The translations under genes and the position numbers were made by a program. A DNA stretch of 61,969 nucleotides, the filler included, from Hausera hauseri (Eukaryota): assembly GCA_046269625.1 (NCBI GenBank). It is 11 parts of 11 records of this genome, joined end to end, with 100 filler letters (N's around TTAATTAATTAA, not from the genome) between each part and the next. Parts side by side here need not be neighbours in the genome. Positions count along the whole stretch, not along the records: positions 45,093 to 51,218 come from JBJURY010136983.1; 10 more parts are not named here. The stretch is one strand, 5' to 3'. The stretch's first letter is position 1, and every line of letters begins with the position of its first letter. The notes below the pieces were generated by a model that did no database searches, had not been told where the DNA came from, and saw only the letters and a list, made by a program, of their open reading frames with translations. Of the stretch, positions 5,861 through 51,218 are shown piece by piece.

Positions 5861-8800
5861 GCTGTTATTTTACCAAAATGTACACAATTTCTTTGGTGGG
5901 ACTATTACCATACTGTTACTAATCAATCACATAAAGGTGATGTTGATATTGAATGGATACCACACGATAAAATTGACTCAGTTCCAAGAGAATATATTAT
6001 ATATGAAAGAGAAGGTCCCAATCTTGATTGGAAAGAGTTAGATAGATTTAGGAAACCAGTCAGTAGAATAACAGTATCCGACAAATCTCCAGACAAACAA
6101 TATTACTACGGTATAGCTGAAATCTCTGGAGATAGAATAGGTAATATAGTAAGTACTCCAGAACCAGTTGTTTTTGCAAGTCCAAAATTCGATAAACAGT
6201 ATGAATACCCTTTACAAATTAAGCTGAAAGATAATTACATGAAACCACGGGAAATAACTTGGGAACCGTCGTTTGATTTTGATTTTACTAAACGTTACTT
6301 TGTTGATATCCAGCCATCGAACAAAGATTATTGGTACAGCATTGGAGAAGTTATTCCAGGAATGACAAGTTTCGCTATTCCACATTATTATGATGACAAA
6401 AATATTAAAGCACGAATTCAAGTTCAGGAAGATATTGGAAAATACAGCCCAATAAGTCGGGATTTAGTGATTCCATCAACGAATTATGAGAATTTCAAAA
6501 TTTATCCCCATAGACTTTTACCGACTAGTTATTCATATATCCCTGTTGAAGACGAAGTATATATTCCCAGACAAAATCTTAACTACTATGTACCAGAAAG
6601 ATTTGATAACATATTCAGTAAGCCTGTTGACCGTGTGAAGATTCCAGATATTTCTACAATTGATTCAATAATTCCATTAACAAATTACGTTTGTCCATCA
6701 GCCCCTATCGGATCAATAAATATTATTCCACAAACAGACTCAAAGATCCGATTGATGTGGCAGCCATACACAGTCACACGAACCGAACATGTTTCACCAA
6801 GTTTTATATTAGAATCTCGACCAGTTGGTATGGACGACCTTTGGAAATTTGAAGCAGATATTGAACCATTTGCCAAACATTTTGAGCTTCCGAAACCATC
6901 AGTGGATACAATGTATCGCATTAGAGCAAGAGTAGGAGATATATACAGTGCTCCGATAAGTGGATTGTACAAAGTTAGAGATATCGACTATGAATATCCA
7001 AAGTACGTTGAACCATTATCTAAACCTGATGTTTCGTACATTCCTGATATCAGTGGTTTTGAAATTAAATGGATCTCAATGCCAACTGCAAAAATATCAG
7101 ATTATCCGATAGATTACGTTGTTCAACTAAAAATAAACAATTTACCAATTTGGGATACCATTGCAACAGTTCCAGCGTCCATAACAAAAATGCATTATTA
7201 CGACATTAAACCAGAAATAATTTATCAGTTCCGAGTTATTCCAAGATTCAGAACAGCGTTTATTCCAGAATATGGCGTTACCACTGACTACATTAGTATA
7301 CCACAATCTGATAGTTACGAAAGAAGGCACAGTTTGAAATCTAAGCCCTATGATAAAATAGAGAACCTGTACAATTTACCTAATGTTGAAGAAAGGGATT
7401 CTCATAGAAATGAATGGATCAAACTGCAGCGTAAAAAAGTGAAACGACCAGATATTGACGAATCAGAAGGCTTCATTTACTATCGTTCATACAGCGATGA
7501 ACAACCAACGAAAATTATGAAGTATTTCTCAGTTCCAGAAAGTAAAGGTAAATTTTCAAACAATATTAACATATTTATTGTCAATTTTTTATTTAGTCCA
7601 AATAAAACCACTTCAACCAATATCTTTAATGGCATCCAGAATGCCTATATCCGATCAAGTAATATTGAATTGGATTCCAGCGATACATACAGATACTCAT
7701 GGTGCACCGACGAGTTATCTAATTGAATACCGTCCTCAAAAAGAACGAAATTGGAAATATTTAATGGAAGTTGATTCATCGAATGTCAGATATGTACATA
7801 CTGGATTAAAGCCTGACGTGGAATACGAATTTCGAATAATCAGTCAAAATGCTTATGGAAGAAGTGAACCTTTGGAAACTTTGATGTCTGTTCATGGTAC
7901 GTAAGCATTTATGATTTTTGTAATATTGACAATAACTCGGTTTATTAATTTTACTTTGTGTTACATTTATTTTACTAACGCTGAATCAATTTGTCTTATT
8001 TTATTATACTTTATAAAAGTCATAATTTCCATCATTTCACTTATAGTCAGTATTGGATTTGACTTATTAGCGCCCAGTGTAAAGCTTTTTTGATGCCCCT
8101 TTTTACTTTTCCGTTATCGACATTTTCTGATTTTTCGAAAAGTATGAATCAATTCTTTTCTGTGACTTAGTCTCCTTTAATTTGTCTTGAACCGTTTTTT
8201 GGCGGAGTCAACAAATAACAAAAATGTTATAAGTTCATGTTGTGTGTACCTATGTCTAGCTTCTGTTTTACCAGTATGGAGATTTCGAAATAATGTAAAA
8301 TAGAGAAATCAGTTATTGATGAAACTTTACAAAATTTCACATTATTAATTTTTACAGTTTTCATTGTACAGCTGATTTTCTATTTGTGNNNNNNNNNNTG
8401 TGACAGCCATAGCGTAGACGGGAAGCAATTTGAAACCTATGTTTGTAGGAACCGTTTATCCATTTCATGTTTGGCATATGTTGCTGGTGTATCCGGTAGA
8501 ATGCGAAGGTTTAATCGCGAAGATAATGTTCCTACCTTTAGAAAACGTTATTTCTAAGATGTGTACGACTGGTACTGAATAGGAGTCATACGTTAAAATG
8601 GTTACGAGTTAAGAAATATCTATTGATGGTAAAATGAATTTTGATATAAACAATTATTATGAAACATACATTTGTACAATATAATCAAACTGATTTCAAT
8701 GAGTAAATTCTAATGACAGTATATTTGGTTTCTATTGTATTGGATGGCCGAAAGTTGTTGCATTGGAACGAAATTTGTTTTAGTAATTATCTATAGCTGT

Positions 8801-11614
8801 TCAAACATGTAAAAGTACTTTGATTTGTATTTCATTCACATTTCCGTAAGCTTTTGGGAATTAATTTATTTTATGTGCGTTACCTTCCGTAAAAACGGTT
8901 AATGATAATAGCATTATTAAGAGTCATTTCGCTGAGTCTTTTCGACTTTTAAAGCTTTTCAATTACAAAATAAAATATGATCCATATGTATTTGCCATTT
9001 CCCATTTTTACGTATTACTGTATTTTTATATTACTTGATGTTTGAAATTAATCGACTACTTCAATCTTTATATTTGAATTCTTTGTTCTTTTTATATTTG
9101 CATTGACGTTTATCTTATTGTTGTTATATTTATTAATGATTTTCTAACGATTTAGAACCAATAGATGTAAAGATTCCCCAAGATTCGATCAGGTTACTAC
9201 CTATAGCACCGGACAGGTACAAAATCAAATGGGAACCAATTGAAGAAACTAAAGTTCCTCTGGCTGGTTATCGAATAGAAATGTTCGATGTTGATAAGGA
9301 TTATCAATGGAGACTTTTAGATACAGTTCCATACTATGAAACAGATTACTTAATTACGTCATTAAAGCCATCATCGCATTACAAATTCAGGGTCTCGCCA
9401 GTATTCTATGATAAGATTGGAATTCCTTCTGAGTATTCAAAAGTGTTCCGAACAGATGTTATTAAGTCTTTCGAAATTCCGTCCGTAACTAATTTGATTT
9501 ATACTAAATTTAAAAACCGTTTATTAAAATTGAAATGGGAATCAGATATGTCTCCATCCAGCATTGATACAGTTGAATATATAATTGATCTTAAACGTCG
9601 CGGCGAATATTCCTGGACGAATGTTGGTTATGTTTCCAATATCTCAGAAACCAGTATTCCATTAGACTATGTTAGACAGTTAAAACCTTCACACATACGT
9701 ATAACGGCGTCCACATCAAGAGGCTATTCAACTCCTTTTGTTATCGAAATACCTGAAGATGTGTATTTGATCAAAGAGACCACGTATGACTATTATCCAA
9801 TCGATGTAAAATACTCTCGATTGACACCAGCATCGTTGAGATTAGATTGGAAATTACCTAGCCATATTACGCGTGAAGGATTGATGGAATACTACACAAT
9901 AGAAGTCAAGGATGTTTATTCTCATTTGTGGAAGCCTATAGTTTCGGTTAAAGCAAGTCAAGGGTTTTTTTTCGTTGACAATCTAATCCCAATTATGGAT
10001 TATGAATTTCGAATAAGACCAAAACTTCGAGAAATAGATTCTGTTAGTTTTAAAACATTAATTGTTCCAAAATATCAATACGATGAATATGAGTCTTTAC
10101 CAGTATCACCAAAATCTTTGACGATTAAACCATTGTTTAGTGTAGTTCTTTTGAAATGGAGCTATGATGAATGGCAGCCAGGAGTACGATACATTGTTGA
10201 AAGATCGTTAAAAAGTGAAGGTTTCTCAAAATGGGTACCAGTTAAAATGGAATATATTGACGATTTTCAACTATATATTCCTGACATCGATAATTCGCTC
10301 TATGAATTTCGATTTATTGCAGTAAATTCTAGAGACGAAAGAAGTAATCCTACATACATGGAACGAACATTAGTTACTATTGATGATTATATTCAAAGTT
10401 CGGTAAAGAAACGACCAAACATAAAAATTGATGAAAGTGAGGTGACTTATCGTGAAGGTTTTCCTGCAATTTTCACAACTTATTTTGAAAAGGATTCCGA
10501 TACTTGGGTTCAATGGCTACATAATGGAACCCTCGTTCGATCAGGTCATAAATACCAAATAATTGAGGAAAATGATCGAAGTATTTTGAAGATCTTCAGT
10601 GTGTCTCTTGCAGATACTGGTCTTGTTTCGTGTCAAATATATTCTGGAGTCGATTATGAAATAAGAACGTGTCTATTAATTGTTGAAAGAATTCCAAAAT
10701 TCATCAAACGCTCAACATTGTTCCAAGACTATATATTAAACGTTGGTGAAGAATTTTTATTCAAAATTCCAATTGGATATTCAACTTTACCGTTAATTGA
10801 AGTGTATAAAAACGATTGTTTGTTAGTGGACACAACAAGAATAACATGGAAAATCGTTGAAAATTTCTTGATAATTAAAATCACTGAAGTAACTGTTGAC
10901 GATCATGGACATTACAGAATTGTCATGCGCAATAAAATGGGTTCTGATTATTTAACATTCTTCTTGATAATCAATGGCAAACCGCGAAAACCTCTCTATC
11001 AACCTCAAGTGAGTGAACACGATTGTGTCATTATCGTTGATTGGGAATATGAGTGGAAAGACAGCGTTATTTACTATGAAATTGAATACAAACACGAAGA
11101 TGGTGAATGGATTTTCTTAGCAAGATCTGTTGCCAATAAGTACGTTATAAACATATTCTCAGATATTTTCCGTGATGTTGGATGGTATCAATTCCGCTAC
11201 CGTGCTGTGAATCGACACGGAACCAGCGACCCATCCCCATTGTCTGAAGGGATAATCATACGTGATAGAAAATTCGCCTATGACTATTCAGTATTGGATA
11301 GAAAGTCCTCGAATATAATCAAAACGGACTTTGAAACGGATTATGAAGTTATAGAAGAGTTATTACGTACTCCGACATCGTCCATTAATAAAGCTCGTCA
11401 TAGAATCACCGGTGATTATGCACTAAGTGAAATAATGGAACCAACTGTATATGATCAGTACGATGAATACATAAAGAAACATCGTCGATTGGTCGATGAG
11501 AGTAAAGTGCGACTTAATGTTCAAAAAACAAATTTTGTTGACCATAAAGTGATGAAAAACATGTATGACCAAACATCTGTCAATGAAACTTTAACTAAAC
11601 ATCGAATTTCGGGA
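5861..11614 (+). CDS. Titin/twitchin/projectin-like giant muscle protein, partial (FN3 repeats, 2 Ig domains, FN3, start of kinase-like domain); exons ~5861-7547, 7597-7896, 9156->11614
   Basis: Repeated FN3 signatures (W..P, Y.IE, LKP...YEFRI, YQFRYRAVNRHGTSDPS); Ig signatures (WLHNG...DTGLVSC; DDHGHYRIVMRNKMG); GT-AG introns 7548-7596 (49 bp) and 7897-9155 join the three ORFs in phase. Confidence 0.85.
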
Positions 11615-12638: not shown

Positions 12639-13414
12639 ATGCGTATATATATTTGTATGACATTTAACATTTACTTTAATTTGTTTCTCATTCAGAAATG
12701 CAAGCAATATCTCATGTATTGCGTCTCTCGCATACATGAGGTGGATCAGTGCTATCAAGAGATGGTGAAGTACTACAAAATTGGCACGGACACGTATGTG
12801 TGTCCAACGTGTGATGTTACAACCCACTGTCCTTATCCCGATTTTTATGAGGTGCACAAGCATCATCTTGGGCCGTTGTGCATTGCCCCACGTACCCGCG
12901 ATACTATAGTAATAGAGTGCATGACGTTGATGCTTGCCATAGTGTAATGGAACAGTACTATGGTGCTACAACGGTGCACGGTAAACGGACCTGCCTTTGC
13001 CCCGGTTGTTGTTCTATAGCTGATGAAATCAACCATGAAAAATTTTATAATCTACGCAAAGGCCACTTAAACCAGTTTAAGCGGTCGAATAAACAACTAG
13101 CTATAGACTCAACCAGTAGCAGCAGTAGCAGCCGCTCAATAACCAGTAGGAAACGTCAGACTTCAGCAAGTCTTGACGACTTAATTAGAAACAGTACCGA
13201 GCAACAGTATCAACAAAAACAAGAGCAACAACAACAAGAACAGGAGCAACAGAATGCCAATCTGCCCAATATTACAGTCACGTACGATCTGTTCAGATCG
13301 TACGTGGACATAAATAGCGAACATATCTGCGAAAACAACAACAACAACAATGCAGATGAGACATGTTCCGCAAAATATGCGCAACGGTTTGGAATCAGAA
13401 GTGGAGAAATTTGA
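12639..13414 (+). CDS. Cys/His-rich tandem-motif ORF(s) upstream of pPolB (Polinton-like element)
   Basis: Two similar units: RIHEVDQCYQEMVKYY..CPTC..FYEVHKHHL and RVHDVDACHSVMEQYY..CPGC..FYNLRKGHL, in frameshifted ORFs. Confidence 0.45.
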
Positions 13415-15757
13415 ACACCAACACTGCAAAGTGCAATATTATGCACTTCAAAATTTGAAAACGTTGAAGGTGACAGGAAACAATGGTACCTGTTACATCG
13501 AACTATACCATATGCCAATGATTTTATTACCGACGTAGACGAAATGCTTTAGAAGAAAATGGCCAACTACACGGAAAAGAGTAGTGGGTGGCGAATTATA
13601 CGAACTGTCTCCCTCGGCTTTATCATAACAAAGTCGAGTGACATAATATATTTATCTGGACGATCATTCATACCGACACCTGCAGCTCTGAAGCAGTCTG
13701 CGGCGGTAGTAAATGTAAAAAATACTAACGATAAATACTGTTTTCTTTACAGTATTCTGATGGTGTTAAAACATGATAAAGTGATAAGAAAACATGCTAG
13801 TAGTCCAAGTCAGTATCGGCCGTATTTTTGCGGATTGGATTTTGATGGAATCTTGATGCCGATGAAATTAAAAACCATACCAGCCTTCGAACGGCTTAAC
13901 TCGACACTAGAAACCAACGTTTTCCCGTACAACTCAATAGTAGAAATACCGGGAGATGAAGAAATCTATATGAATCCCCGTGTGGATATAATTTATCGTA
14001 GTCGCAACCCAAATGGCCGCCAAGTAAATATGTTGCTATTGGAACAAAAATAAAAGTACCATTACGTTGTAGTGAAAAATCTGGAGAGACTGCTGAACAT
14101 AGAACATGACCACTTCAAAAAACGGATACAGCGTAAATGGTGTCCCGTATGTCTGCACGGATTCAGATCAGAAACAATGTTGGAGAAACATGTAACTCTA
14201 TGCAGACAAAATTCGTCAGGAGCCACAATGTATGTCATGCCCGTCAAAAAGGAACTCAAGTTCACAGATCGGTCAAATACAGACAGTCTAGCATACGTAG
14301 TATATGCCGATATTGAAGCTATCTTACCAAGGCACAACGTATATGACCAAAAACATGTTCCAATCACGTCGGTATGTTGTTTGTCTCAATAAAAGCCACA
14401 GGTCAATCTCAGTACTATGTTTTCCACGAATGGAATTGTGTACGCGATTTCTTGCAGCAGTTTCAAGCCATAGTGGAAACTGAAATCGCACCCAGGTATA
14501 GTAGAAATAGCAACAAACCCTTGATGTGGACAGATGAATATGAATACCTGACGTTTGCAGTCACAGACGAATGTTACCTGTGCCACAAAATATTACCGTT
14601 TGACGCACTGGAATGGCTCGTACAGGATCACAATCATTTTTCTGGTAGATATCTCGGAGCAGCATGTAATTCATACAATTTTCCATGGCGTGTGCGGCCA
14701 TTTTTATCGATGGTATTTCATAACTTTAAGGGTTACGATTGTCACCATATTTTTAAATGGGCAATAAGCGGATTTCCGCATTGGAAACTATCTGTAATTC
14801 CGACTACAATAGAGAAATAACTGTCACTGTCTGCACATATTAACCGGTTCCAAGTACGATTCTTTGATTCACTGCCATTCCTCAATGAATCTCTGGTCGT
14901 ATGAGCGGCTCCAGACGCAAACGAATTACCATCGCAAAGGCCCGGTATCAAAAAAGATCACAGAAAATGAATATCACAGAGCGCAGTCGTTTTTGACAGA
15001 GCTCGGCTGTAGAAACCTGTTGTAGTACATGCTTCACTATCTGAAATAGAATGTATACCTGTTAGCCAATGTGTTTCAGACATTTTGAGCTAAAGCGTTG
15101 GCAGAAGATAGGTTGGAGCCACTCAACTTTTGCTCAATACCCGGAATGAGTTAGGCGTCAGCTCTGATGCTACTGAATCCGGATATCGAGCTATTGCAAG
15201 ACCCGAAAATGTACCTAATGTTTGATGTTGGTATTCGTGGTGGCATGACATTTGTCAGCAAGCATCACGTAATCAGTGATGATACCATATCACTATTGTA
15301 TATCGACATTAATAACCTGTACGGCTGGGAACTTTCGCAACCACTGCCGTACGGTTCATTCGAATAAGTGGTTGACAAACAGGACATGGACGCATTACTG
15401 GAAAATCTGCAGAGAGAAAACACGACAGAAAACAGCTCAATCGGATACCTGATGGAAGTCGATCTCGTGATACCAGATGAGCTGCATGACTTACTGGATG
15501 AACTACCGGTAACACCAATCAGCCAATATCTGCCGGGCTGGAAGGTGAAGAAGGTGATTATGACTCATGAATCCAAGCAAAATTATATAGTTCATTGGCG
15601 TCTGTTGCAATTTTACATATACTCGTCACACAGCTGCATTGTGCAATCCGATTAGCACGGGCACTGATATTCAAGCCGTATATCAGTCAGAATTCGGAAA
15701 ACGAGCTGCAGCATGTGCGAAGTTTGAAAAGGACTGCAGCAAACTGAAAAAAATATA
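13350..15757 (+). pseudogene. Protein-primed DNA polymerase B (pPolB) of a Polinton/Maverick/adintovirus-like element, frameshifted
   Basis: SGW...GRSFIPTP..VNVKN..CFLYSI; C2H2 CPVCLHGF..LEKHVTLC; ExoI VYADIEAIL; endonuclease-VII-like CYLC..VQDHNHFSGRYLGAACNSYN; ExoII FHNFKGYD; IRGGMTFV; motif A LYIDINNLYG. Confidence 0.9.
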
Positions 15758-22379: not shown

Positions 22380-24719
22380 CACCACTTCCACTTCCATTTT
22401 CTTTTTTTTTCACCAGTCTACATATCTACACCCTCAATACATCATACCCACACATCCCAACCCTTCGTACCTCTATTTCACTTTAATCAATTCTTCTGAT
22501 CTTTATTTCACCATAACGGCGCTATCATAACTCTCAACGGACCCCTACCATTTTTCTGAAGCCACATTTGCCTGCACATACATCTTCGTATCCGTGGTGG
22601 CATGAACTCATCGCCAACTATTGACACCACGGATAAAACCACCACAAAATCCATACCTGTCATACTACTCCAAAAGCCCACTCCTAACTCTGCCAACTAC
22701 CTCTCACCTATTACCTCTTCAGCTCCTTTCCCCAACTTCATCGAGCTTTTCATCGACAACTAAGGTTCTAGAAAAACTTCGCTGCAATTTCACCAACTTT
22801 GGCCGCAAGCAAATAATATCACCAACTTTTTAACTAGAGCCCATAACCTTCTTTTCCTACTGCCTAACAGTATAAAAACCCGCATCCACAACATCATTGA
22901 AATCTTTGAACTTTCTGATCCATATACCCAACTTTCTAACGCAGTTCTTAAAATCACCGTGCCTTCCCTGGACACGATCATACAGCGTTTCTTCCACGAC
23001 AACGTTATAGGCACCAAACGGCCATCAGAATTCTTACGTACATCCTTAGCGCACGTACATACTCTCGGCGTCACTAAAGAGCACAACCCAGAACTACTGC
23101 GCCACTATTTTCTTAATGCGGTACCTATCCAAATTCGGGCCCTACTTACCGTGGTGGGGAACTCCACGCCGCTTGATAAATTGGCCGAATTAACCGATAG
23201 GGCACATGATGTCCTACAAATAAATTCTCCACCAATCGTTTCAGCAGCAGTTGCCGCTAATGATAATACATCCATAGAACAACAACTTAATCAGCTACGT
23301 GCTGAAAACATTGCACTACATGCAACAATCAACAACATCAATAATAAATTGAACGAATTGTCTCTGTCCCGACGAGGGGGTTTTGCCGTTAACAGCGCCC
23401 GTTCTGTATCCAGAAACCGTACACCATCGCCTGCGCGTTCGTCGATCTGCTATTATCACAGCAGATTCAACACTAATGCTCAGAAGTGCTGCCTAGGGTG
23501 CAAGTTTTACAACAAGAATTTTTTTTCGGACACCGTTGTTTGCATCTACCATGCAAGGTTAAACATCAAGATCGTAAATGCCTTCCAGGTTGCGCTTTCA
23601 AATCCAATACGAACGACGGACGTACTGCCTTCCCTTGTAATAGTCGTCCTAATTCACCCTTTCAAAAAAACTAAGTTCGCCGCCAGAAGTCACGGCAAAC
23701 CCTGGCAATGGCAATCCTTTACATTCTGAACGCCGACACGTCTCTTTTGCTGTCTTTACTCTAAAGGCTGCAATCACTGCTCCTACAACACAATTTGTTG
23801 ACTTTCTCATCGATATAGGTGCAGCGATTTCTCTATTGTCACAAACCTTTCCTACACAAAATACTCCATTCAAGATCAAATCCTTATACACTGCTTCAGG
23901 CCAACTGCTGCACATTTCTGGCACAGCAACATTATCTTTCACTTTACCAAATTTCTCCTCACCTTTCCACTGGACGTTCACAGTCGCTAACGTCCTGTCG
24001 GCAACTCTAGGATCTGACTTTCACTCACATTATAATCTACTGGTTGACTGCAGTCAGCTATGTTTGAGGAACGGCACCACTGGCGACATTTCTGGACATG
24101 TAAATAGCGTTTCGACTACCGCGCAGTCGATCGGAATGCGGAAGTCAATCTTAAAAAATTCAACGAATGATTCGATTTTGTATAACAATAATTCCATTTG
24201 TAAATTTTTAAATAATAATACTGACATTCGATCGAAGTTCAATGTCGATAATTGTGGTACTGCCACCAACGCTATCTCATTCGACAAAAATACCTCAGCC
24301 AACATCATTTTCAATTCAACCATCTTACACCAAATACCACTTGACTGCACATCACCAAACAACTTACACATTGCATCTGCAACTACTCAAGCCGTTTCAC
24401 CACATTCACCGAATCTCTCACAGTTACCTACAACTCTACAACAGTTCGTCAATACATCATACCCACACGTACTTAAAAAAGACCGTACCTTTACTCCCGC
24501 AAACAGCACTTTATACCACATACTCACACAACACCAACATCCAATATGCTAAAGAGTACGGCCTCTGTTACCTTGTCGCAGACAAGCAGTAGTAGCCGAA
24601 TTTCTCGAATCAGAACATTCCGGCATAGTACGCCGTTCCAAATCTCCTTGGTCATTACCTTTAAACGTTGTACAAAAAGGACGGTACCTTTAGACCATGC
24701 GGTGACTAACGACAGCTAA
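22380..24719 (+). mobile_element. Ty3/Gypsy CsRn1-like copy B: UBL-gag (two CHCC motifs)-frameshift-protease-RT start
   Basis: HIHLRIRGG|MNSSPT at 22575-22619 in frame with gag ORF 22959; CYYHSRFNTNAQKCCLGC; slippery AAAAAAAC 23664-23671 before TAA; FLIDIGAAISLL protease; IVRRSKSPW..RPCGD RT. Confidence 0.9.
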
Positions 24720-45092: not shown

Positions 45093-46446
45093 CTACGGAG
45101 CACAAATACTGACACGATAGCTGATACTTTTATTCGTACGTGGATTAGTAGATTCGGATCCCCTCGTTACATCATCTCGGATCAAGGTTCTCAATTCGAA
45201 TCAAATCTGTTTGAATCTCTAGTGAACCGATTAGGTATAAATCATACTCATACTACACCCTATCATCCTCAATCAAATGGCCTACTCGAACGTTTCCACC
45301 GAACCTTGAAAACATCACTTCGGATCCATGCGCAGTCAAACACCAATTGGACAACACTTCTACCGTTTGTCCTGCTCGGTAGGCGAAACACTGCGTCCGC
45401 TTCCACAGGATGCTCGCCTACCGAAACCTTATTTGGAACACCTGTTCGCTCCTTGTTCGAATTAACCACACTAGATAATACACCTACAAACGAAAAGATC
45501 AAAGCAGCACATGACCATTTCATTGAAGTCTGTAAAGACTCATTCTGTAGAATACTACACAACAATGAAACATATTTACATGACGACTTGTATTCTGCAC
45601 AGTTCGTTTACCTACGAAATCAAACACCGTTTGGTTTTCAACCGCAGTATCTAGGGCCATATAAGCTAATTCCTCTGCATTCTCACAACGCGATAATCCT
45701 TAAGGAGGGAAAGGAATTACCAGTTCTTATAAATAATGTAAAACCCGACTTTTTTGTAGATCACACCTCTCCCACCGAAACTTCGACAAATTTTCTGGCT
45801 CCTACATCTCCTTCTGTTCCTGCTGCTGACTCTACACCTACACCGTTACTAGAATTTACTCCTCAAACTTCTTCCACTAATCTCCCAATTTTTCCTCCTC
45901 TTTCTGCTACATTTTCACTTATAGCCCCTTCTTCGTCTCTGAACGATATACCAAATTCAACGACGAAATCTGACAGTTTTGCCTCCACCAACTTGTCAAC
46001 CAGATTTAACAATACAAAAAAATACAAATCGGTCACGTTCAGTACCTATAGTAGAGTTCTCAATACTTATGGAATACAACGACTTGTACATACGAGGACC
46101 ACATAGCTCAAACTATTTCGTTCTACGTTCGCTTACTATTTCTTTTATCCTCAGAGTTCCCAATTCAGCCACGGGGGGTATTGTAGTGCCATCATCTTTT
46201 TCATTTATTATCGTCGTATACTCTGATGTCATAATCTTCACATTCATTACTGCACATTTTCGTTCTTTTGTTCTGATAAACCTGACTATGAAATTGTCGA
46301 AATTTACCACCGGCCTATTTCTACGCCTTCTGTTCCGTTCACTGCCGACATGCAGAAATAATTTGCATATAATCAAGAATATTTATAGTTCGACCATACT
46401 CCAATAACTTAGTAACTGTTTCGGTAAATTACCCTCGGATATTACA
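45093..46446 (+). mobile_element. CsRn1-like integrase (45093-46106), PPT and 3' LTR (46182-46446)
   Basis: WISRFGSP..SDQGSQFES, TTPYHPQSNGLLERFHRTLK, PQYLGPY; PPT GGGGGG at 46173-46178; LTR TGTAGT...ATTACA. Confidence 0.85.
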
Positions 46447-47448
46447 ACCTCGCCTTCTTTTTGCGATCGAAATTTATTGACTCGCAAAATTCCTTTAACA
46501 AAATCACCGAACAATTTTTATAGCTTTCTATACAGTTTTCTGTTGTGAAGCTGAATGTATCTCAATGACGATAGTGAAACAGTAAATCCAACATTTTCAA
46601 TAAAATCCAAAAAACTTCATAAAAATTAACCAAAACGGATGTATCAATGATTAACAAGCCAGATACTTTTCAGGAATTTTTTTAAACCTAAAAAATCACT
46701 GTTACAACCAAATATGCAATATACTTTGCATGGAACATTTTTGACATATCTTGACACATTCTTTAGTTTTCCAACTCCATAATTTATCTGAATATTAATG
46801 ACCTTTGATTCCTCGATTTCTGGTTTGCCTGTCACTTGAAAAAAACGGTTTTATCATACTAAACAGTATTGAATTCGAAAACGATAATTAACATGTATAC
46901 TATTTAAAAAAAAGAAATATTCCAATTTCTGTAGTGTTAGGCATAAACTTTCGGCCTTGGTCAAAATTGCTATAGATTGCAGTTTATATAAATTTTTTTA
47001 ATCCGATTTAAAATATATATATGTGAAATGGCTATGGCAATGCAAAGTATTTCATAAACAGTCATCGGGGGGTTTTGGAATGATTGCCGAATTGTGACAA
47101 ATAAATAGCTGAATGTTGTTTTAATATTCAGCAGATAACAACGTCCACACTTTTAAATTGAACATTTTAAAAACTTAAAAAATATTGATTAGTGATTTGT
47201 TTCCATTCATGATTGCAATTTGAATTGTTTTTTTGAATATAAAATTTTATCATTCTCCGAAATTTATGGACTGCATGTATATGTATCTACTGGAGACGTA
47301 TAAATCCCCTTTTATTGTAGCAATACTGGAGTGCTATATATCGTTCACAGGGGTCGATTGACGCACTCCGAATACCCTGGTATTAATTCAAAATTATATC
47401 TGTTTAATTTCTATCAGATACACCAAAGACTAAATCGTTCGAACAGCA

Positions 47449-47928
47449 GTGACAATTACGTATCCCATATACAAGAATTATATGGTGCTTTGGGATCGAT
47501 TACTATACACAACAATTATGGACTATGATGATTTAGCTGTTGCACTACAAGAAATATCACAAGATTCTTACGCTGACATTTTATTGGGCTATTTAAATCA
47601 TAAAATGCCCGAGGTTAAAATGGAAGCAGTTGTTCTTATCGGAAAATTTTTTGAATATGTAAAATTGGATTCTTCCAACGAAGAAACCTTGAGTCAGTTT
47701 CTTAAAGAACTTGACAAACTTCGCAAAGATGATCCTTTGAATGTTCAAAACGTTATACGTACTGCTATTGAAGCTGCACTGAGATGTTTTCAGAATAGCT
47801 TTACGAATTTTTATCTCGAAAATCTCGATTCACACAGTAAGAGTAAAATCGTTATTAAGAAAACACGAAAAGTAAAATTTCCGCTTCTTCTGAAACACCA
47901 CGTTCAGTGGTTGCAAACTAAAGGTTAA
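47449..47928 (+). CDS. HEAT/TOG-repeat-like fragment
   Basis: LLGYLNHKMPEVKMEAVVLIGKFF...LDKLRKDDPLNVQNVIRTAI resembles TOG-domain HEAT repeats; isolated fragment. Confidence 0.35.
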   Translation: MTITYPIYKNYMVLWDRLLYTTIMDYDDLAVALQEISQDSYADILLGYLNHKMPEVKMEAVVLIGKFFEYVKLDSSNEETLSQFLKELDKLRKDDPLNVQNVIRTAIEAALRCFQNSFTNFYLENLDSHSKSKIVIKKTRKVKFPLLLKHHVQWLQTKG

Positions 47929-48026
47929 AAGGAAGAGATATCCACAGAGCCATACAAAAAAAAGTTCAATCGAATGATATTAATTATAGTACGGAGTATT
48001 GTGATTTTATTCGAACAGGAAACGAA

Positions 48027-51000
48027 ATGAATACGGAAAATGTAGGATCCATAATGGCTATGGAATTAGAACATGCCGAAATATCGACTGCAAGGTTGAA
48101 TAAGACGAAAAATCAACCTTATCTTCGAACGTTGGAAAATATTCCAACTGCCATGATCAAAAATATAACGAACAGTAAAAAAATTGATAAATCTCCATTC
48201 AAGGAATTTGATACGTATATAACAAACGATGGTCACTCAGTTGCTAATCCTTTCGGTCCAGGAACAATAATGGGAGCCAGGGTTACTTCGGATAGTTCGG
48301 GAATGTTTCGTGTGCATTATCTAAATTTGAACTGTGTGATACAGTCGAGTTATTCTTTGAGTAACAATGTGTATTACAAATTTTTATTTTTCAACGTCAA
48401 AACAACGTTTTATAATCTGGAACCAGTGTCGTTTGGTTTGTCCAGAAAAATATATTCATCGGAACGTTTCCTTCCAAACAATTTTGTTAATATATCAAGT
48501 CCTAGAATAGTCATTAGCAAGGGTAAGATAGCATGCAATAATCGATTCAGTTATCAATTAGCACTATCTTTTAAGAAGTTGAAGACAGAAATTTCTGTTG
48601 GATTGTATCTTTATGATACTAGTTTCATGGAGATTTTTGTGGATAAAATTAGTGTTGGACGAGTCGTATTAGAATTTAACCAAAATAGTTATCTGTTGGT
48701 AAATCTCAGAAGTTGGTACAATACGATTTTGGTTGAAGAAATGTCACCGAGACCCCCCATTTGTTGTAGCCTGGCTCTGTTAAGATGTACATTACCTAAA
48801 CGGCACAGTGATATGGTACCCTTTGACGATGACAATTCAACTCACATTTTGAGGTTACATAGTAATTCTGATAATTTACAACGACCTGATAACGCACATT
48901 ACCTGTCATTAGAATCAACCACATTACGTCCATCCGTCAACATAAATTCTAATCGCACATGTTACCAATGTAACAAACCCGGCCATGGTGTGCGGAACTG
49001 TATAGGAAAACGCACAGCGATGAACGCCAGACAACGGTCACAGCGTTTCTCATCGTTATCTTGGCCATTGCATTACAAACCATCCGTCATACTGAACACT
49101 GCCTATCTTCATCCTGAACCAAATATCGACCCGTCATCGAAAGTCAATGATGGATATCTTAACATGAAGTCGTTCAATGCCTACGTCGATGACTTGTCCA
49201 TCAAGCCCATTTATATAGTATCCGGTGACCAGACAGTCATTATTTCCATGTGCGTTATGAAGGGCGACAAAATTGTCGTGAAACTTGATCATTTGTTCAA
49301 GAACGGTCCGAGGGATGACCTTTACGGATTTCTCACGGACCAAATGGCCGCGAACTTCATTCATGCGTACGAGTCGTCAGTGGTGACATCGCATAATAAT
49401 CGACGGTGGAAACAGAATTCGACACCAGTCACCAATATCTACGCCGGAGTAATGGGAATAGAGCCTAACCAAAGTCCGGTTATCGTAGTTTCTATTTGCT
49501 ATTACAATTTGGTTGCATTTGTTACTCGTCCCTCTTGGCAGTATAACTTTCGCCATTTGCCTTTTATGATTCCATACACTTTCTGTTGCCTAAGACTTTT
49601 AATATACAATCAATATCCAACGAAGGCGTTCGTTGCTGATACATTTTGCACTTATTTCGACACGACTTTCACCTCCGTTGCGATTCTAGATCATTTGAGC
49701 AAAACACTTCTTTTCTTTAATCCTCAGATGACAAATTTCGTCTATTCCATTCAAACGTTCTTTCTCTTTATTCCTTGTCCACGACATAGTTTCTCGAGAT
49801 ATCTCGCACTCGCAATATTTTTTGAACTTCATAGTGATCACATAGATATTAAGGAAGTGGTCCAGGCATCTCATTTTCTTGAGTTGCAAACAATCCATGG
49901 CATAATAAACCAATCAACCTTCTGTACTACATCAATGAGTCCCACGCCATGGTGTGTTTCTTCACCACACCAACCACTTGAGTTTACACCGACTATATCT
50001 TTTTCATTCTTTCTAAACAATCACCATTTACTGACGCATAGAATGACAAATTCGATAGATGCATCCTACCTACATAACTACGTACTACACGTCGCCAACC
50101 TCTCCGATTTTTATCTTACGTACAATAATCTACCAATAACTAACACCAATCTCAATAGCTTTTCTGTACCTTCAACCCATTGCATCGTCATTCACATACA
50201 CATTCGCTTACGTGGTGGAATGGAATCATCACCTACCATTAACACTACTGACCGAAATACCTCCAAAACATCACATTTGGCGTTCAACCAAAAATCGTCG
50301 ATCGTTACCACGCCATCTTCTTTCAGTAGTTATGCTTCTACAACCTCGCCAGTCAAACACACTTCTCAATGCACAGAGTACTTTATTGACCACGAACAGT
50401 CTAACAAAACGTGGCTTAGCTTCCACAAACTCTGGCTGCAATCAAACAATATTACTGATCCGGTAACCAAGGCCCATAACTTGCTTTGTCTTCTTCCAAC
50501 AACGGTAAAATCGGCAATTCACGATTTTCTCGATATCTTCCAGAAACCTGATCCATACACGCATCTTTAAAACGCAGTTTTGAAATTTACGGAACCATCT
50601 ATGGAATCAATAATTCACCGTTTCTTCAACGACAATGCAATGGGGGAGCAGAAACCATCTGATTTTATAAGAACGTCACTCGTGCAACTCCAAACATTTG
50701 GCGTGACGAAACAACATAACGCCGACCTTTTGCGACGTTACTTCCTGAATGCATTGCACATACAAATTAGGGCCTTACTTACTGTCGTTGAAGAGTCGAC
50801 AATATTAGATAAATTAGCCGAACTGGCGTATAAAACATATGACGTTTTGAACGTACACACTCAACCAGTTATTTCTGCAGCAGTTACTACCAAAAATGTT
50901 TCACTCGAACAACAGTTAAACGAATTACGCGCCGCAAATGCTGCACTCCATAACACTATCAACTCTATCAATGATAAATCGAATAATCTTTCTTTACAGC

Positions 51001-51218
51001 GTAGTAATGTACTTTCGTCTAATCGAACACGTTCTTATTCCAGAAATCAAACACCTTCACCTACGAGGTCACTCGTATGCTATTACCACACCAAATTTAG
51101 TAGCAACGCAAATAAGTGTTGCTTAGGGTGTAAATATTATCCGCCAAATCTAGATTCAAGTAATATAATTTGCGTCTATCATTCAAAATTCGGTCCTAAT
51201 GCTAGGAGTTGTATTACT
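48027..51218 (+). mobile_element. Ty3/Gypsy CsRn1-like copy D: long polyprotein [unknown-CCHC-BTB-like?-UBL-GG|Gag], one in-frame stop at 50568
   Basis: 847-aa ORF and ORF 50580 share a frame; CYQCNKPGHGVRNC 48960-49001; RLRGG|ME 50205-50225; gag with CYYHTKFSSNANKCCLGC and CVYHSKFGPNARSC. Confidence 0.85.
49992..50219 (+). other. Ubiquitin-like domain with RLRGG terminus (copy D, uninterrupted)
   Basis: 76 aa TISFSFFL-NNHHLLTHRM-TNSIDASYLHNYVLHV-ANLSDFYLTYNNLPI-...-VIHIHIRLRGG; beta-beta-alpha-beta-beta-beta pattern and exact ubiquitin C-terminal RLRGG. Confidence 0.75.

What the first reader, a model, noticed from the sequence alone, without database searches (positions are those of the whole stretch)
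49992..50570. Gypsy family with a ubiquitin-like domain ending RLRGG fused to Gag: possible deubiquitinase-processed Gag
Seen: four diverged copies on four separate contigs put a ubiquitin-type C-terminus right before Gag. Copy D has HIHIRLRGG|ME (50205-50225), copy B HIHLRIRGG|MN (22575-22607), copy A LHFLIRGG|SD (1980-1963, minus) and copy C LHFR(fs)GG|SD (39519). In copy D the preceding 76 aa follow the beta-grasp pattern, and D(F/L)Y(L/F)T recurs in B, C and D. The di-glycine survives while flanks diverge, which points to selection. Copies A and C have Ser, not Met, after GG, so this is not just a chance motif in front of a gag start codon. Established: ubiquitin-ribosomal protein fusions and SDE2 are cleaved after GG by host DUBs, and cytopathic pestiviruses use captured ubiquitin as a polyprotein cleavage signal. 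I know of no UBL in CsRn1/Kabuki/Boudicca Gags. Inference: the element uses host DUBs to generate the Gag N-terminus (Met or Ser, both cleavable and N-end-rule stabilising) and may release a free, possibly conjugatable, UBL.
Basis: partly seen in the sequence, partly recalled or inferred. Interest (0 to 1): 0.9.

Follow-up and report, generated by a model that had tools for sequence, protein, structure and literature searches.

The report
Ubiquitin-tail motif before a retrotransposon Gag
A flatworm-type (CsRn1-like) Gypsy retrotransposon copy carries the ubiquitin tail RLRGG right before the methionine where its Gag should begin, at the end of a long in-frame extension that includes a piece of the host DPAGT1 gene, but no test here showed the 76 residues before the tail to be a ubiquitin-like domain.

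Summary
The motif is real. RLRGG sits at 50205-50219 and Met-Glu at 50220-50225. That Met lies 286 residues before a perfect CsRn1-type CHCC box (51078-51131), which is about where Gag should start.

The claimed ubiquitin-like domain is not established:
- Pfam gave nothing, and PDB matched only the last 13 residues, with no significance.
- AlphaFold without an alignment gave pLDDT 33 and 49.
- Foldseek found nothing below E 1.5, and the independent aligner listed no ubiquitin-like fold in its top 50.
- A language-model hint of ubiquitin (0.87, below threshold) disappeared once the tail was removed.

The motif is not at the start of a protein. Frame 0 is open from 47922 to a single TAA at 50568. 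The 765 upstream codons hold a classical CCHC knuckle and a 128-residue fragment of host DPAGT1 (hhalign E 4e-29). Contig depth puts that fragment at roughly 70-100 copies.

I read this as a mosaic extension built from captured sequences, ending in a short tail like the junction of two polyubiquitin repeats. Cleavage after GG is possible but untested, and cellular enzymes normally need a whole ubiquitin. No other copy could be retrieved, so conservation of GG is unchecked.

The parts
45093..46106 (+). C-terminal part of an integrase (end of pol) from an upstream Gypsy-type copy, cut by the piece's edge. It is not part of the Gag unit downstream.
   Evidence: Pfam rve 2.7e-07 and rve_3 8.3e-07. 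Contig depth is 7,000-10,800. At 45611 nearly all other contigs read G, which makes TAG, so most copies may end pol there.
47449..47928 (+). A 159-aa ORF in frame 1 with a faint HEAT-repeat look, in the low-copy part of the piece. It might join frame 0 through a 41-nt GT..AG interval at 47924-47964. That is my own reading and is untested.
   Evidence: ORF list. Weak Pfam HEAT and RRP12_HEAT hits at E 0.013-0.2. Depth is 25-45, from 2-4 contigs.
48027..50570 (+). An 847-aa ORF. Its frame is open from 47922, and it ends at a single TAA at 50568-50570 inside Gag. It holds the extension, the tail motif and the first 116 aa of Gag.
   Evidence: Frame 0 has no stop between 47922 and 50568, while the other two + frames have about 50 and 65 stops over 48027-50568.
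48960..49001 (+). A classical CX2CX4HX4C zinc knuckle inside the extension.
   Evidence: Regex coordinates. Pfam zf-CCHC E 0.077-0.13, below threshold. PDB matches to RBBP6 and retroviral nucleocapsid knuckles at E 0.057-8.
49091..49963 (+). An 873-nt (291-codon, in-frame) block that two contigs of run X1 lack. It contains the DPAGT1 fragment.
   Evidence: Joint 49090->49964, skipping 873 nt, in 2 contigs. The shorter flank is only 22 nt, so this is weak.
49422..49805 (+). Captured fragment of host DPAGT1 (GlcNAc-1-phosphate transferase, Glycos_transf_4). It matches about residues 178-307 of a 409-aa enzyme and is repeated in the genome.
   Evidence: The best 150 of 468 hits (all that were listed) align to ORF residues 464-668, best E 1.2e-23. 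All ten hits scanned carry PF00953. hhalign probability 99.8, E 4e-29, 41% identity. Depth is 700-1,150 against 11-12 per single contig. Invariant positions N188, G250, R302 and P304 are changed.
49992..50219 (+). The fold is not established.
   Evidence: No Pfam hit. No DPAGT1 relation. AF2 pLDDT 49 and pTM 0.35, with strand/helix order E4-11, E24-26, H27-37, E42-47, E59-61, E68-75. Foldseek best E 1.5, with several ubiquitin-like chains at TM 0.32-0.42. VIA best Z 5.2, to MinE. The Atlas's nearest named clusters are ubiquitin at 0.87, and this is lost without the tail.
50205..50219 (+). RLRGG, identical to the last five residues of ubiquitin. It is preceded by alternating hydrophobic and His residues and followed by Met.
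50220..51218 (+). Gag of a CsRn1-clade Gypsy element, broken by TAA at 50568-50570 and cut by the piece's edge. The first ~50 aa are Ser/Thr-rich, and the helical, highly repeated core starts near 50410-50480.
   Evidence: Depth jumps from about 3,000 to 13,000-15,000 at 50419 in X1, and likewise in X2 and X3. Helices are predicted from about 50409 at low confidence. No Pfam or PDB Gag match.
51078..51131 (+). CHCC signature CX2HX9CX3C, diagnostic of CsRn1-clade Gag. A second CX2HX9C follows at 51171-51212.
   Evidence: Regex. The signature is defined in PMC2582038.

Best explanation
The piece holds the 5' half of a CsRn1-clade Gypsy retrotransposon variant. Its Gag is not encoded alone. It sits at the end of a long reading frame of at least 730 codons whose upstream part is a mosaic of acquired sequences: a segment with a classical CCHC knuckle and a 128-residue fragment of the host DPAGT1 gene. 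This mosaic has been amplified together with the element.

The last 13 residues of the extension resemble the end of one ubiquitin repeat running into the next (hydrophobic/His alternation, then RLRGG, then Met), and they abut the canonical Gag methionine. I read this as a short ubiquitin-derived tail, picked up in the same way as the DPAGT1 piece, probably by template switching onto an abundant polyubiquitin mRNA. I do not read it as a complete ubiquitin-like domain.

Shown: the motif, its position, the open frame, the DPAGT1 fragment and its multi-copy status. Inferred: the ubiquitin origin of the tail. Any use of the tail as a cleavage site that frees Gag from the extension is speculative. 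I give it about one chance in four.
For: - RLRGG|M lies exactly 286 aa ahead of the CHCC box. PwRn1 encodes Gag plus Pol in 1194 aa, so a Gag of about 300 aa is my inference of the family-typical size.
- From this ORF's amino-acid composition, the chance of RLRGG at one given position is about 1e-7.
- Frame 0 is open for 2.6 kb while the other frames are full of stops.
- The DPAGT1 fragment is secure and multi-copy, so this family does carry host mRNA pieces in frame ahead of Gag.
- The only PDB sequences matched by the segment are polyubiquitins, and only at the tail and repeat junction.
- The body shows no ubiquitin signal, while the DPAGT1 piece, which I assume was captured at a similar time, is still 41% identical to its family. 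That fits capture of a short tail better than capture of a whole ubiquitin.
- Planarian Gypsy elements with host-derived domains inside a giant ORF1 are a precedent for mosaic extensions in flatworms (PMC6431247).
Against: - The tail match has no statistical weight as a sequence alignment (2.8 bits per stretch). The ubiquitin origin rests on motif plus position only.
- No LTR, primer-binding site or target duplication was found, so the unit's 5' end is undefined.
- The first 100 codons or so of the open frame (47922-48218) lie in near single-copy DNA. Part of the 'extension' may therefore be flanking host sequence or a rare variant.
- The G-poor, C-rich composition of 49893-50219 resembles the element's own tails rather than the host-like DPAGT1 block. 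That speaks against recent capture.
- No second copy was seen, so nothing is known here about conservation.
- This copy is itself broken by a TAA inside Gag.
Confidence: 0.45

Rival explanations
1. The 76 aa are a complete but highly diverged ubiquitin-like beta-grasp domain. Host deubiquitinases (or a dedicated ubiquitin-like-protein protease) cut after GG, which releases Gag with a Met N-terminus and a free ubiquitin-like module or extension.
For: - Position of the tail.
- The need for some cleavage, given the in-frame extension.
- The AF2 model of the isolated segment has an element order that can be laid on ubiquitin's (strand, helix, strands, and a final strand ending just before the RGG), by my own comparison.
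- About 10 of the top 50 Foldseek rows are beta-grasp proteins: ThiS, ISG15, ubiquitin, SUMO-3 and MoaD.
- The only named neighbours in the ESM Atlas are ubiquitin and Rad60-SLD clusters.
- Several X1 contigs stop matching upstream of about 49932-49964. The block shared by the most copies therefore begins only about 10-20 codons before the proposed domain.
Against: - No Pfam ubiquitin hit at E 10.
- Identity to ubiquitin outside the tail is at random level (hand alignment from memory).
- AF2 confidence is low (pLDDT 33 and 49).
- Foldseek E is 1.5 or worse, and TM to ubiquitin-like chains is only 0.32-0.42.
- VIA-align lists no ubiquitin-like fold in its top 50.
- The Atlas score of 0.87 is below its 0.9 line, and recognition collapses from 2469 to 1024 when the last 13 residues are removed.
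- Cellular hydrolases generally need a complete ubiquitin (PMC5381556).
Confidence: 0.2
2. This is a chance motif. RLRGG arose by drift in a poorly constrained Ser/Thr/Asn/His-rich region ahead of Gag. It has no ubiquitin ancestry and no role. If Gag is freed from the extension at all, the element's own aspartic protease does it.
For: - There is no significant similarity to ubiquitin by any search.
- The scan that produced the finding looked at very many windows, so rare motifs will turn up.
- The G-rich patch at the motif is not exceptional for the region.
- LTR elements normally process Gag with their own protease.
Against: - The chance of exact RLRGG at the single position before the predicted Gag Met is about 1e-7.
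- The flanks (His68-like His, alternating hydrophobic residues, Met after GG) also agree with the polyubiquitin junction.
Confidence: 0.3
3. The open frame upstream of Gag is not translated with Gag. The region is leader or LTR, or an assembly chimera of different repeats, and Gag starts at the Met at 50220 on its own.
For: - Depth rises stepwise towards Gag.
- Composition changes near 48750.
- The contig is short and lies in repeat-rich DNA.
- The 873-nt block is absent from some contigs.
Against: - A 2.6-kb frame without a stop, against about 50 and 65 stops in the other frames over the ORF, cannot be accidental.
- No primer-binding site for tRNA-Trp better than chance lies near the Gag Met.
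- No LTR-like repeat is present in the piece.
Confidence: 0.05

Closest known systems
[quoted passage not shown]
   Same: Captured host sequence sits in frame in a polyprotein. Gly-Gly lies directly before the first residue of the protein that must be freed. The residue after GG is not Pro. Short C-terminal ubiquitin fragments (14 aa) also occur in such insertions.
   Different: In pestiviruses at least one complete, essentially unchanged 76-aa ubiquitin is normally present and is needed for efficient cleavage. Here only the last ~13 residues resemble ubiquitin. The host is a retrotransposon of a flatworm-type lineage, not an RNA virus. No cleavage has been shown.
Natural ubiquitin fusion genes (polyubiquitin, ubiquitin-ribosomal protein fusions); from general knowledge
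   Same: RLRGG followed directly by Met, as at the junction between polyubiquitin repeats.
   Different: No recognisable ubiquitin body on either side, and what follows is Gag rather than a further ubiquitin repeat.
CsRn1 / PwRn1 / AgCR clade of Ty3/Gypsy elements (PMC2582038)
   Same: A perfect CHCC signature CX2HX9CX3C near the C-terminal end of Gag. The Gag length from the Met at 50220 fits. Copy number is very high.
   Different: Described members are about 5 kb, with gag-pol alone and a tRNA-Trp primer-binding site. This unit has at least 730 extra in-frame codons ahead of Gag, and no recognisable primer-binding site or LTR in the piece.
Burro giant Gypsy elements of planarians, with host-like domains inside a huge ORF1 (PMC6431247)
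   Same: A flatworm Gypsy-type element whose polyprotein carries extra, host-derived or zinc-knuckle segments.
   Different: Burro is far larger and its domains are different (BIR, MATH, ankyrin, Smc). No ubiquitin tail or DPAGT1 piece is reported there.
Ddi1/Ddi2 (ubiquitin-like domain followed by a retropepsin-like domain); from general knowledge and PMC7072860 as listed
   Same: A ubiquitin-type element is linked to retroelement-derived protein.
   Different: Ddi1 is a host gene. Its ubiquitin-like domain is a clear beta-grasp, is not cleaved off and precedes a protease, not Gag.

Membership tests
Ubiquitin / ubiquitin-like beta-grasp domain (Pfam PF00240 and relatives) | Significant sequence or profile similarity over the domain | tested here: not met
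   No Pfam family at E up to 10 for 76-, 97- and 167-aa cuts. PDB phmmer matches only the 13-residue tail, at 2.8 bits per stretch.
Ubiquitin / ubiquitin-like beta-grasp domain (Pfam PF00240 and relatives) | Beta-grasp fold | tested here: inconclusive
   AF2 without an alignment gave pLDDT 33 and 49. Foldseek's best E was 1.5, with ubiquitin-like chains at TM 0.32-0.42. VIA-align's best was Z 5.2 to MinE, with no ubiquitin-like fold in the top 50. The Atlas score was 0.87 for ubiquitin clusters, and this was lost without the tail.
Ubiquitin / ubiquitin-like beta-grasp domain (Pfam PF00240 and relatives) | C-terminal Leu-Arg-Gly-Gly type tail at the end of the domain | tested here: met
   RLRGG at 50205-50219, the only GG in the frame.
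Ubiquitin / ubiquitin-like beta-grasp domain (Pfam PF00240 and relatives) | Cleavage after GG by a deubiquitinase or ubiquitin-like-protein protease | not testable with these tools
   This needs an expression or enzyme assay.
Pestivirus-type ubiquitin processing cassette | At least one complete ubiquitin monomer directly upstream of the protein to be released | tested here: not met
   No ubiquitin body is detectable. The requirement is stated in PMC5381556.
CsRn1 clade of Ty3/Gypsy retrotransposons | Gag with CHCC signature CX2HX9CX3C | tested here: met
   51078-51131 matches exactly. The definition is in PMC2582038.
CsRn1 clade of Ty3/Gypsy retrotransposons | Primer-binding site complementary to tRNA-Trp (TGGTGA[G/C]CCCG[T/A]) after the 5' LTR | tested here: not met
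   Only 3-mismatch matches were found: 5 against 6.5 expected by chance, and none sits just upstream of Gag. The 5' LTR may lie outside the piece.
CsRn1 clade of Ty3/Gypsy retrotransposons | Flanking LTRs and 4-bp target duplication | tested here: not met
   No long direct repeat in the piece. The piece holds only the 5' part of the unit, so this is uninformative.
CsRn1 clade of Ty3/Gypsy retrotransposons | Sequence similarity of Gag and Pol to clade members | not testable with these tools
   Protein and locus searches with the Gag core returned nothing.
DPAGT1 / GPT (Glycos_transf_4), for the fragment at 49422-49805 | Profile similarity to the family | tested here: met
   phmmer E 1.2e-23. 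hhalign probability 99.8, E 4e-29.
DPAGT1 / GPT (Glycos_transf_4), for the fragment at 49422-49805 | Full-length multi-pass enzyme with the invariant catalytic positions | tested here: not met
   Only columns 183-314 of 421 are present. Invariant N188, G250, R302 and P304 are replaced. It is a fragment, not an enzyme.

The most novel reading that the evidence does not exclude
An LTR retrotransposon family has recruited a ubiquitin-type tail, with or without a diverged beta-grasp body, as a host-operated cutting site. Cellular deubiquitinase-type proteases would then release authentic Gag from a variable, host-derived N-terminal cargo. This would be the retrotransposon counterpart of the ubiquitin insertions of cytopathic pestiviruses, and it would let the element tolerate and carry captured host sequences in frame ahead of Gag.
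Probability: 0.2. Interest if true: 0.8.

Novelty: new variant of a known kind. Interest (0 to 1): 0.45.

Why it matters
If the tail is used, this would be the first retrotransposon found to hand a step of Gag maturation to the host ubiquitin-processing machinery. It would also explain how an element can carry foreign coding sequence in frame ahead of Gag without disabling particle assembly. Three literature searches here found no such case.

Even if the tail is inert, the unit is a clear example of a CsRn1-clade element that has captured a fragment of an essential host gene (DPAGT1) and amplified it inside its own reading frame. That is relevant to how retroelements shuffle host exons in flatworm-type genomes. 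As it stands, the evidence supports only the motif and the mosaic, not the mechanism.

Tried and rejected
1. Is the 76-aa segment the diverged C-terminal end of the captured DPAGT1? Rejected. hhalign of 49806-50240 against a 40-sequence DPAGT1 alignment gave probability 0.2, and the secure homology stops at 49805.
2. Finding other copies all failed:
   - Three word-index protein searches (206 aa, 97 aa, Gag core) found nothing.
   - Metagenome and viral contig scans found nothing.
   - Exact look-up of seven ORF variants found nothing in the collection.
Weaker hits to the tail or Gag part, if any, were not shown.
GG conservation could not be read from it.
4. Those 39 listed differences are mostly non-synonymous even in pol, so they reflect this copy's private changes and say nothing about selection.
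5. A codon-usage frame test was uninformative because the training set was too small.
6. The G-rich patch at the motif is not unusual.
7. Searches for an LTR shared between the 3' end of the upstream element and the region ahead of Gag found nothing. A shared LEFTP peptide is not significant, E 0.23.
8. No Rfam family or tRNA was found in the piece.
9. Complex prediction was not used, because the report claims no specific protein pair.
10. No comparison with a typed ubiquitin sequence was run. The hand alignment quoted rests on my memory of ubiquitin.
11. The frame was never read through the TAA at 50568.
Full report
**What the piece contains**

Only 45093-51218 of the window is genome; the rest reads N. 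The piece opens with the C-terminal part of an integrase (45093-46106; Pfam rve 2.7e-07, rve_3 8.3e-07). An AT-rich stretch with many stops follows.

From 47922 a single frame stays open to a lone TAA at 50568-50570, and then runs on to the edge of the piece. Over the 847-codon ORF (48027-50570) the other two + frames carry about 50 and 65 stops. The openness of this frame is therefore not accidental.

**Is it a Gag, and of which kind?**

The far end of the frame carries CX2HX9CX3C at 51078-51131 and a second CX2HX9C at 51171-51212. This is exactly the CHCC signature that defines Gag of the CsRn1 clade of Ty3/Gypsy elements in trematodes and insects (PMC2582038).

No Pfam, PDB or database protein matched the Gag pieces. 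The paper notes that this Gag has no detectable relatives outside the clade.

**The motif**

RLRGG is at 50205-50219, preceded by V-I-H-I-H-I and followed by M-E. It is the only Gly-Gly in the 1099 codons of the frame.

The Met at 50220 is 286 residues before the CHCC box. PwRn1 encodes Gag plus Pol in 1194 aa, so a Gag of about 300 aa is what I would expect (inference). No other in-frame Met would give that size. The first ~50 residues after the Met are Ser/Thr-rich. Predicted helices (low confidence) and the jump in contig depth both place the conserved Gag core from about 50410-50480.

The tail therefore sits exactly at the predicted Gag start. From this ORF's composition, the chance of RLRGG at one given position is about 1e-7.

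**Is the preceding 76 aa a ubiquitin-like domain?**

I tested this in six ways.
1. Pfam: no family at E up to 10 for three different cuts.
2. phmmer against all PDB sequences: the only hits are tetra-ubiquitin and polyubiquitin-C, and only over the last 13 residues. Each stretch scores 2.8 bits, and the whole-sequence E of 0.84 comes from the match repeating four times. Laid on ubiquitin without gaps (ubiquitin from my memory, aligned by hand), the 71 residues before the tail share about four identities, which is random level.
3. AlphaFold2 on 206 aa without an alignment: pLDDT 33.
4. AlphaFold2 on the isolated 79 aa: pLDDT 49, pTM 0.35. The elements are E4-11, E24-26, H27-37, E42-47, E59-61 and E68-75. 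By my own comparison this order can be laid on ubiquitin's, but the model is not trustworthy.
5. Foldseek of that model against the PDB: nothing below E 1.5. About ten of the top fifty rows are beta-grasp proteins (ThiS, ISG15, ubiquitin, SUMO-3, MoaD) at TM 0.32-0.42. The independent VIA-align search of 48,161 chains put MinE first (Z 5.2) and listed no ubiquitin-like fold in fifty rows.
6. ESM Atlas: the only named clusters among the thirty nearest were ubiquitin and Rad60-SLD, at 0.85-0.87, under the tool's 0.9 line. With the last 13 residues removed, recognition fell from 2469 to 1024 and no hit remained.

Together these tests give faint hints that depend on the tail, and no support for the body. 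All predictions lacked an alignment, so the fold is not excluded either.

**What lies upstream**

The whole-library phmmer search with the 847-aa ORF returned 468 hits. The 150 listed all align to ORF residues 464-668, with a best E of 1.2e-23. All ten that I scanned carry Glycosyl transferase family 4, and one also the DPAGT1 insertion domain. These are the UDP-GlcNAc:dolichyl-phosphate GlcNAc-1-phosphate transferases.

hhalign against a 40-sequence alignment fixes the homology at 49422-49805, matching columns 183-314 of 421 (probability 99.8, E 4e-29, 41% identity). It is a fragment, and four positions that are invariant in the family are replaced. The stretch after it, including the 76 aa, is not DPAGT1-derived.

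Further upstream sits a classical CX2CX4HX4C knuckle at 48960-49001.

**Copy number**

Contigs of three public runs were laid on the piece at 80% likeness. In run X1, single contigs in the quiet part carry depth of about 11-12.

| Region | Summed depth (X1) |
|---|---|
| 47219-48018 | 25-45 |
| 48219-49418 | 126-850 |
| DPAGT1 fragment | 720-1,150 |
| 50019-50418 (end of the 76 aa plus start of Gag) | about 3,000 |
| Gag core | 13,000-15,000 |

The DPAGT1 piece and the tail region are therefore part of a repeated unit, roughly 70-100 and about 200 copy-equivalents by my division. Depth from contigs is a rough guide only.

Two X1 contigs join 49090 to 49964, skipping 873 nt (291 codons, in frame) that include the DPAGT1 piece. 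The shorter flank is only 22 nt, so this is weak evidence. Contigs at 85-95% identity over parts of 49841-50143 also occur in runs X2 and X3, which are labelled as other organisms.

**Boundaries not found**

The piece holds no LTR-like direct repeat. No tRNA-Trp primer-binding site better than chance is present. There is no tRNA or Rfam family. Composition switches near 48750 from host-like to the G-poor, C-rich style of the element, and the 76-aa region has the most extreme skew.

**Reading**

The family clearly tolerates and amplifies foreign coding sequence in frame ahead of Gag.

The simplest account of the tail is that a short piece spanning the junction of two polyubiquitin repeats was acquired in the same way. 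A whole ubiquitin of similar age to the DPAGT1 piece, which is still 41% identical to its family, would be easy to recognise, and none is there.

Whether the tail works as a cutting site is open. Pestivirus work shows that cellular hydrolases normally need a complete ubiquitin. However, inefficient cutting survived loss of up to 32 N-terminal residues, and Pro after GG blocks cutting (PMC5381556). Here the residue after GG is Met.

My estimates:

| Reading | Probability |
|---|---|
| Ubiquitin-derived tail in a mosaic extension | 0.45 |
| Pure chance motif | 0.30 |
| Untranslated or chimeric region | 0.05 |

**Known or new**

Literature searches on retrotransposons combined with ubiquitin-like domains, CsRn1, gene capture, ubiquitin fusion and LRGG found no retrotransposon with a ubiquitin tail at Gag. 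The nearest precedents are the pestivirus insertions and mosaic ORF1 polyproteins of planarian Burro elements.

**Limits**

Conservation of GG, the key argument for selection, is untested.
- I built no consensus and no mended frame. The TAA at 50568 is reported only as a break, and the two Gag pieces were searched separately.

Noticed in passing
window 49422-49805: A 128-residue fragment of host DPAGT1 (GlcNAc-1-phosphate transferase) lies in frame inside the retrotransposon's upstream ORF. It is present at roughly 70-100 copy-equivalents in run X1, and four family-invariant residues are replaced. This is a captured and amplified host gene fragment.
   Followed up: yes
window 48960-49001: A classical CCHC zinc knuckle (CX2CX4HX4C) lies upstream of a Gag that itself uses the unusual CHCC box. 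It may be a remnant of a second, different Gag/nucleocapsid or of a host knuckle protein.
   Followed up: partly
window 49091-49963: Two contigs of run X1 join 49090 directly to 49964, an in-frame skip of 873 nt that removes the DPAGT1 block. Long and short forms of the extension therefore seem to coexist. The supporting flank is only 22 nt.
   Followed up: no
window 45611: Nearly all other contigs (depth 7,673 of 7,682 in X1) read G instead of C here, which turns TAC into TAG. Most copies of the upstream element may therefore end pol at 45611-45613. This copy reads on for 164 more stop-free codons of Ser/Thr/Pro-rich sequence, to 46106.
   Followed up: partly
window 47449-47964: A 159-aa ORF with a faint HEAT-repeat look lies in near single-copy DNA. 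A 41-nt GT..AG interval (47924-47964) would splice it in frame onto the long ORF. If that is real, a host-like exon is fused to the retroelement frame. This is my own reading and is untested.
   Followed up: no
window 50568-50570: A single TAA interrupts Gag inside its most conserved, most repeated part, and the frame continues unchanged behind it. The read-laying output did not show whether other copies share it.
   Followed up: no
window 48027-48750: The first ~240 residues of the long ORF look beta-rich, have host-like composition (positive GC skew) and match no family. Copy number rises stepwise across this stretch, with one high-depth X1 contig diverging upstream of about 48345.
   Followed up: no
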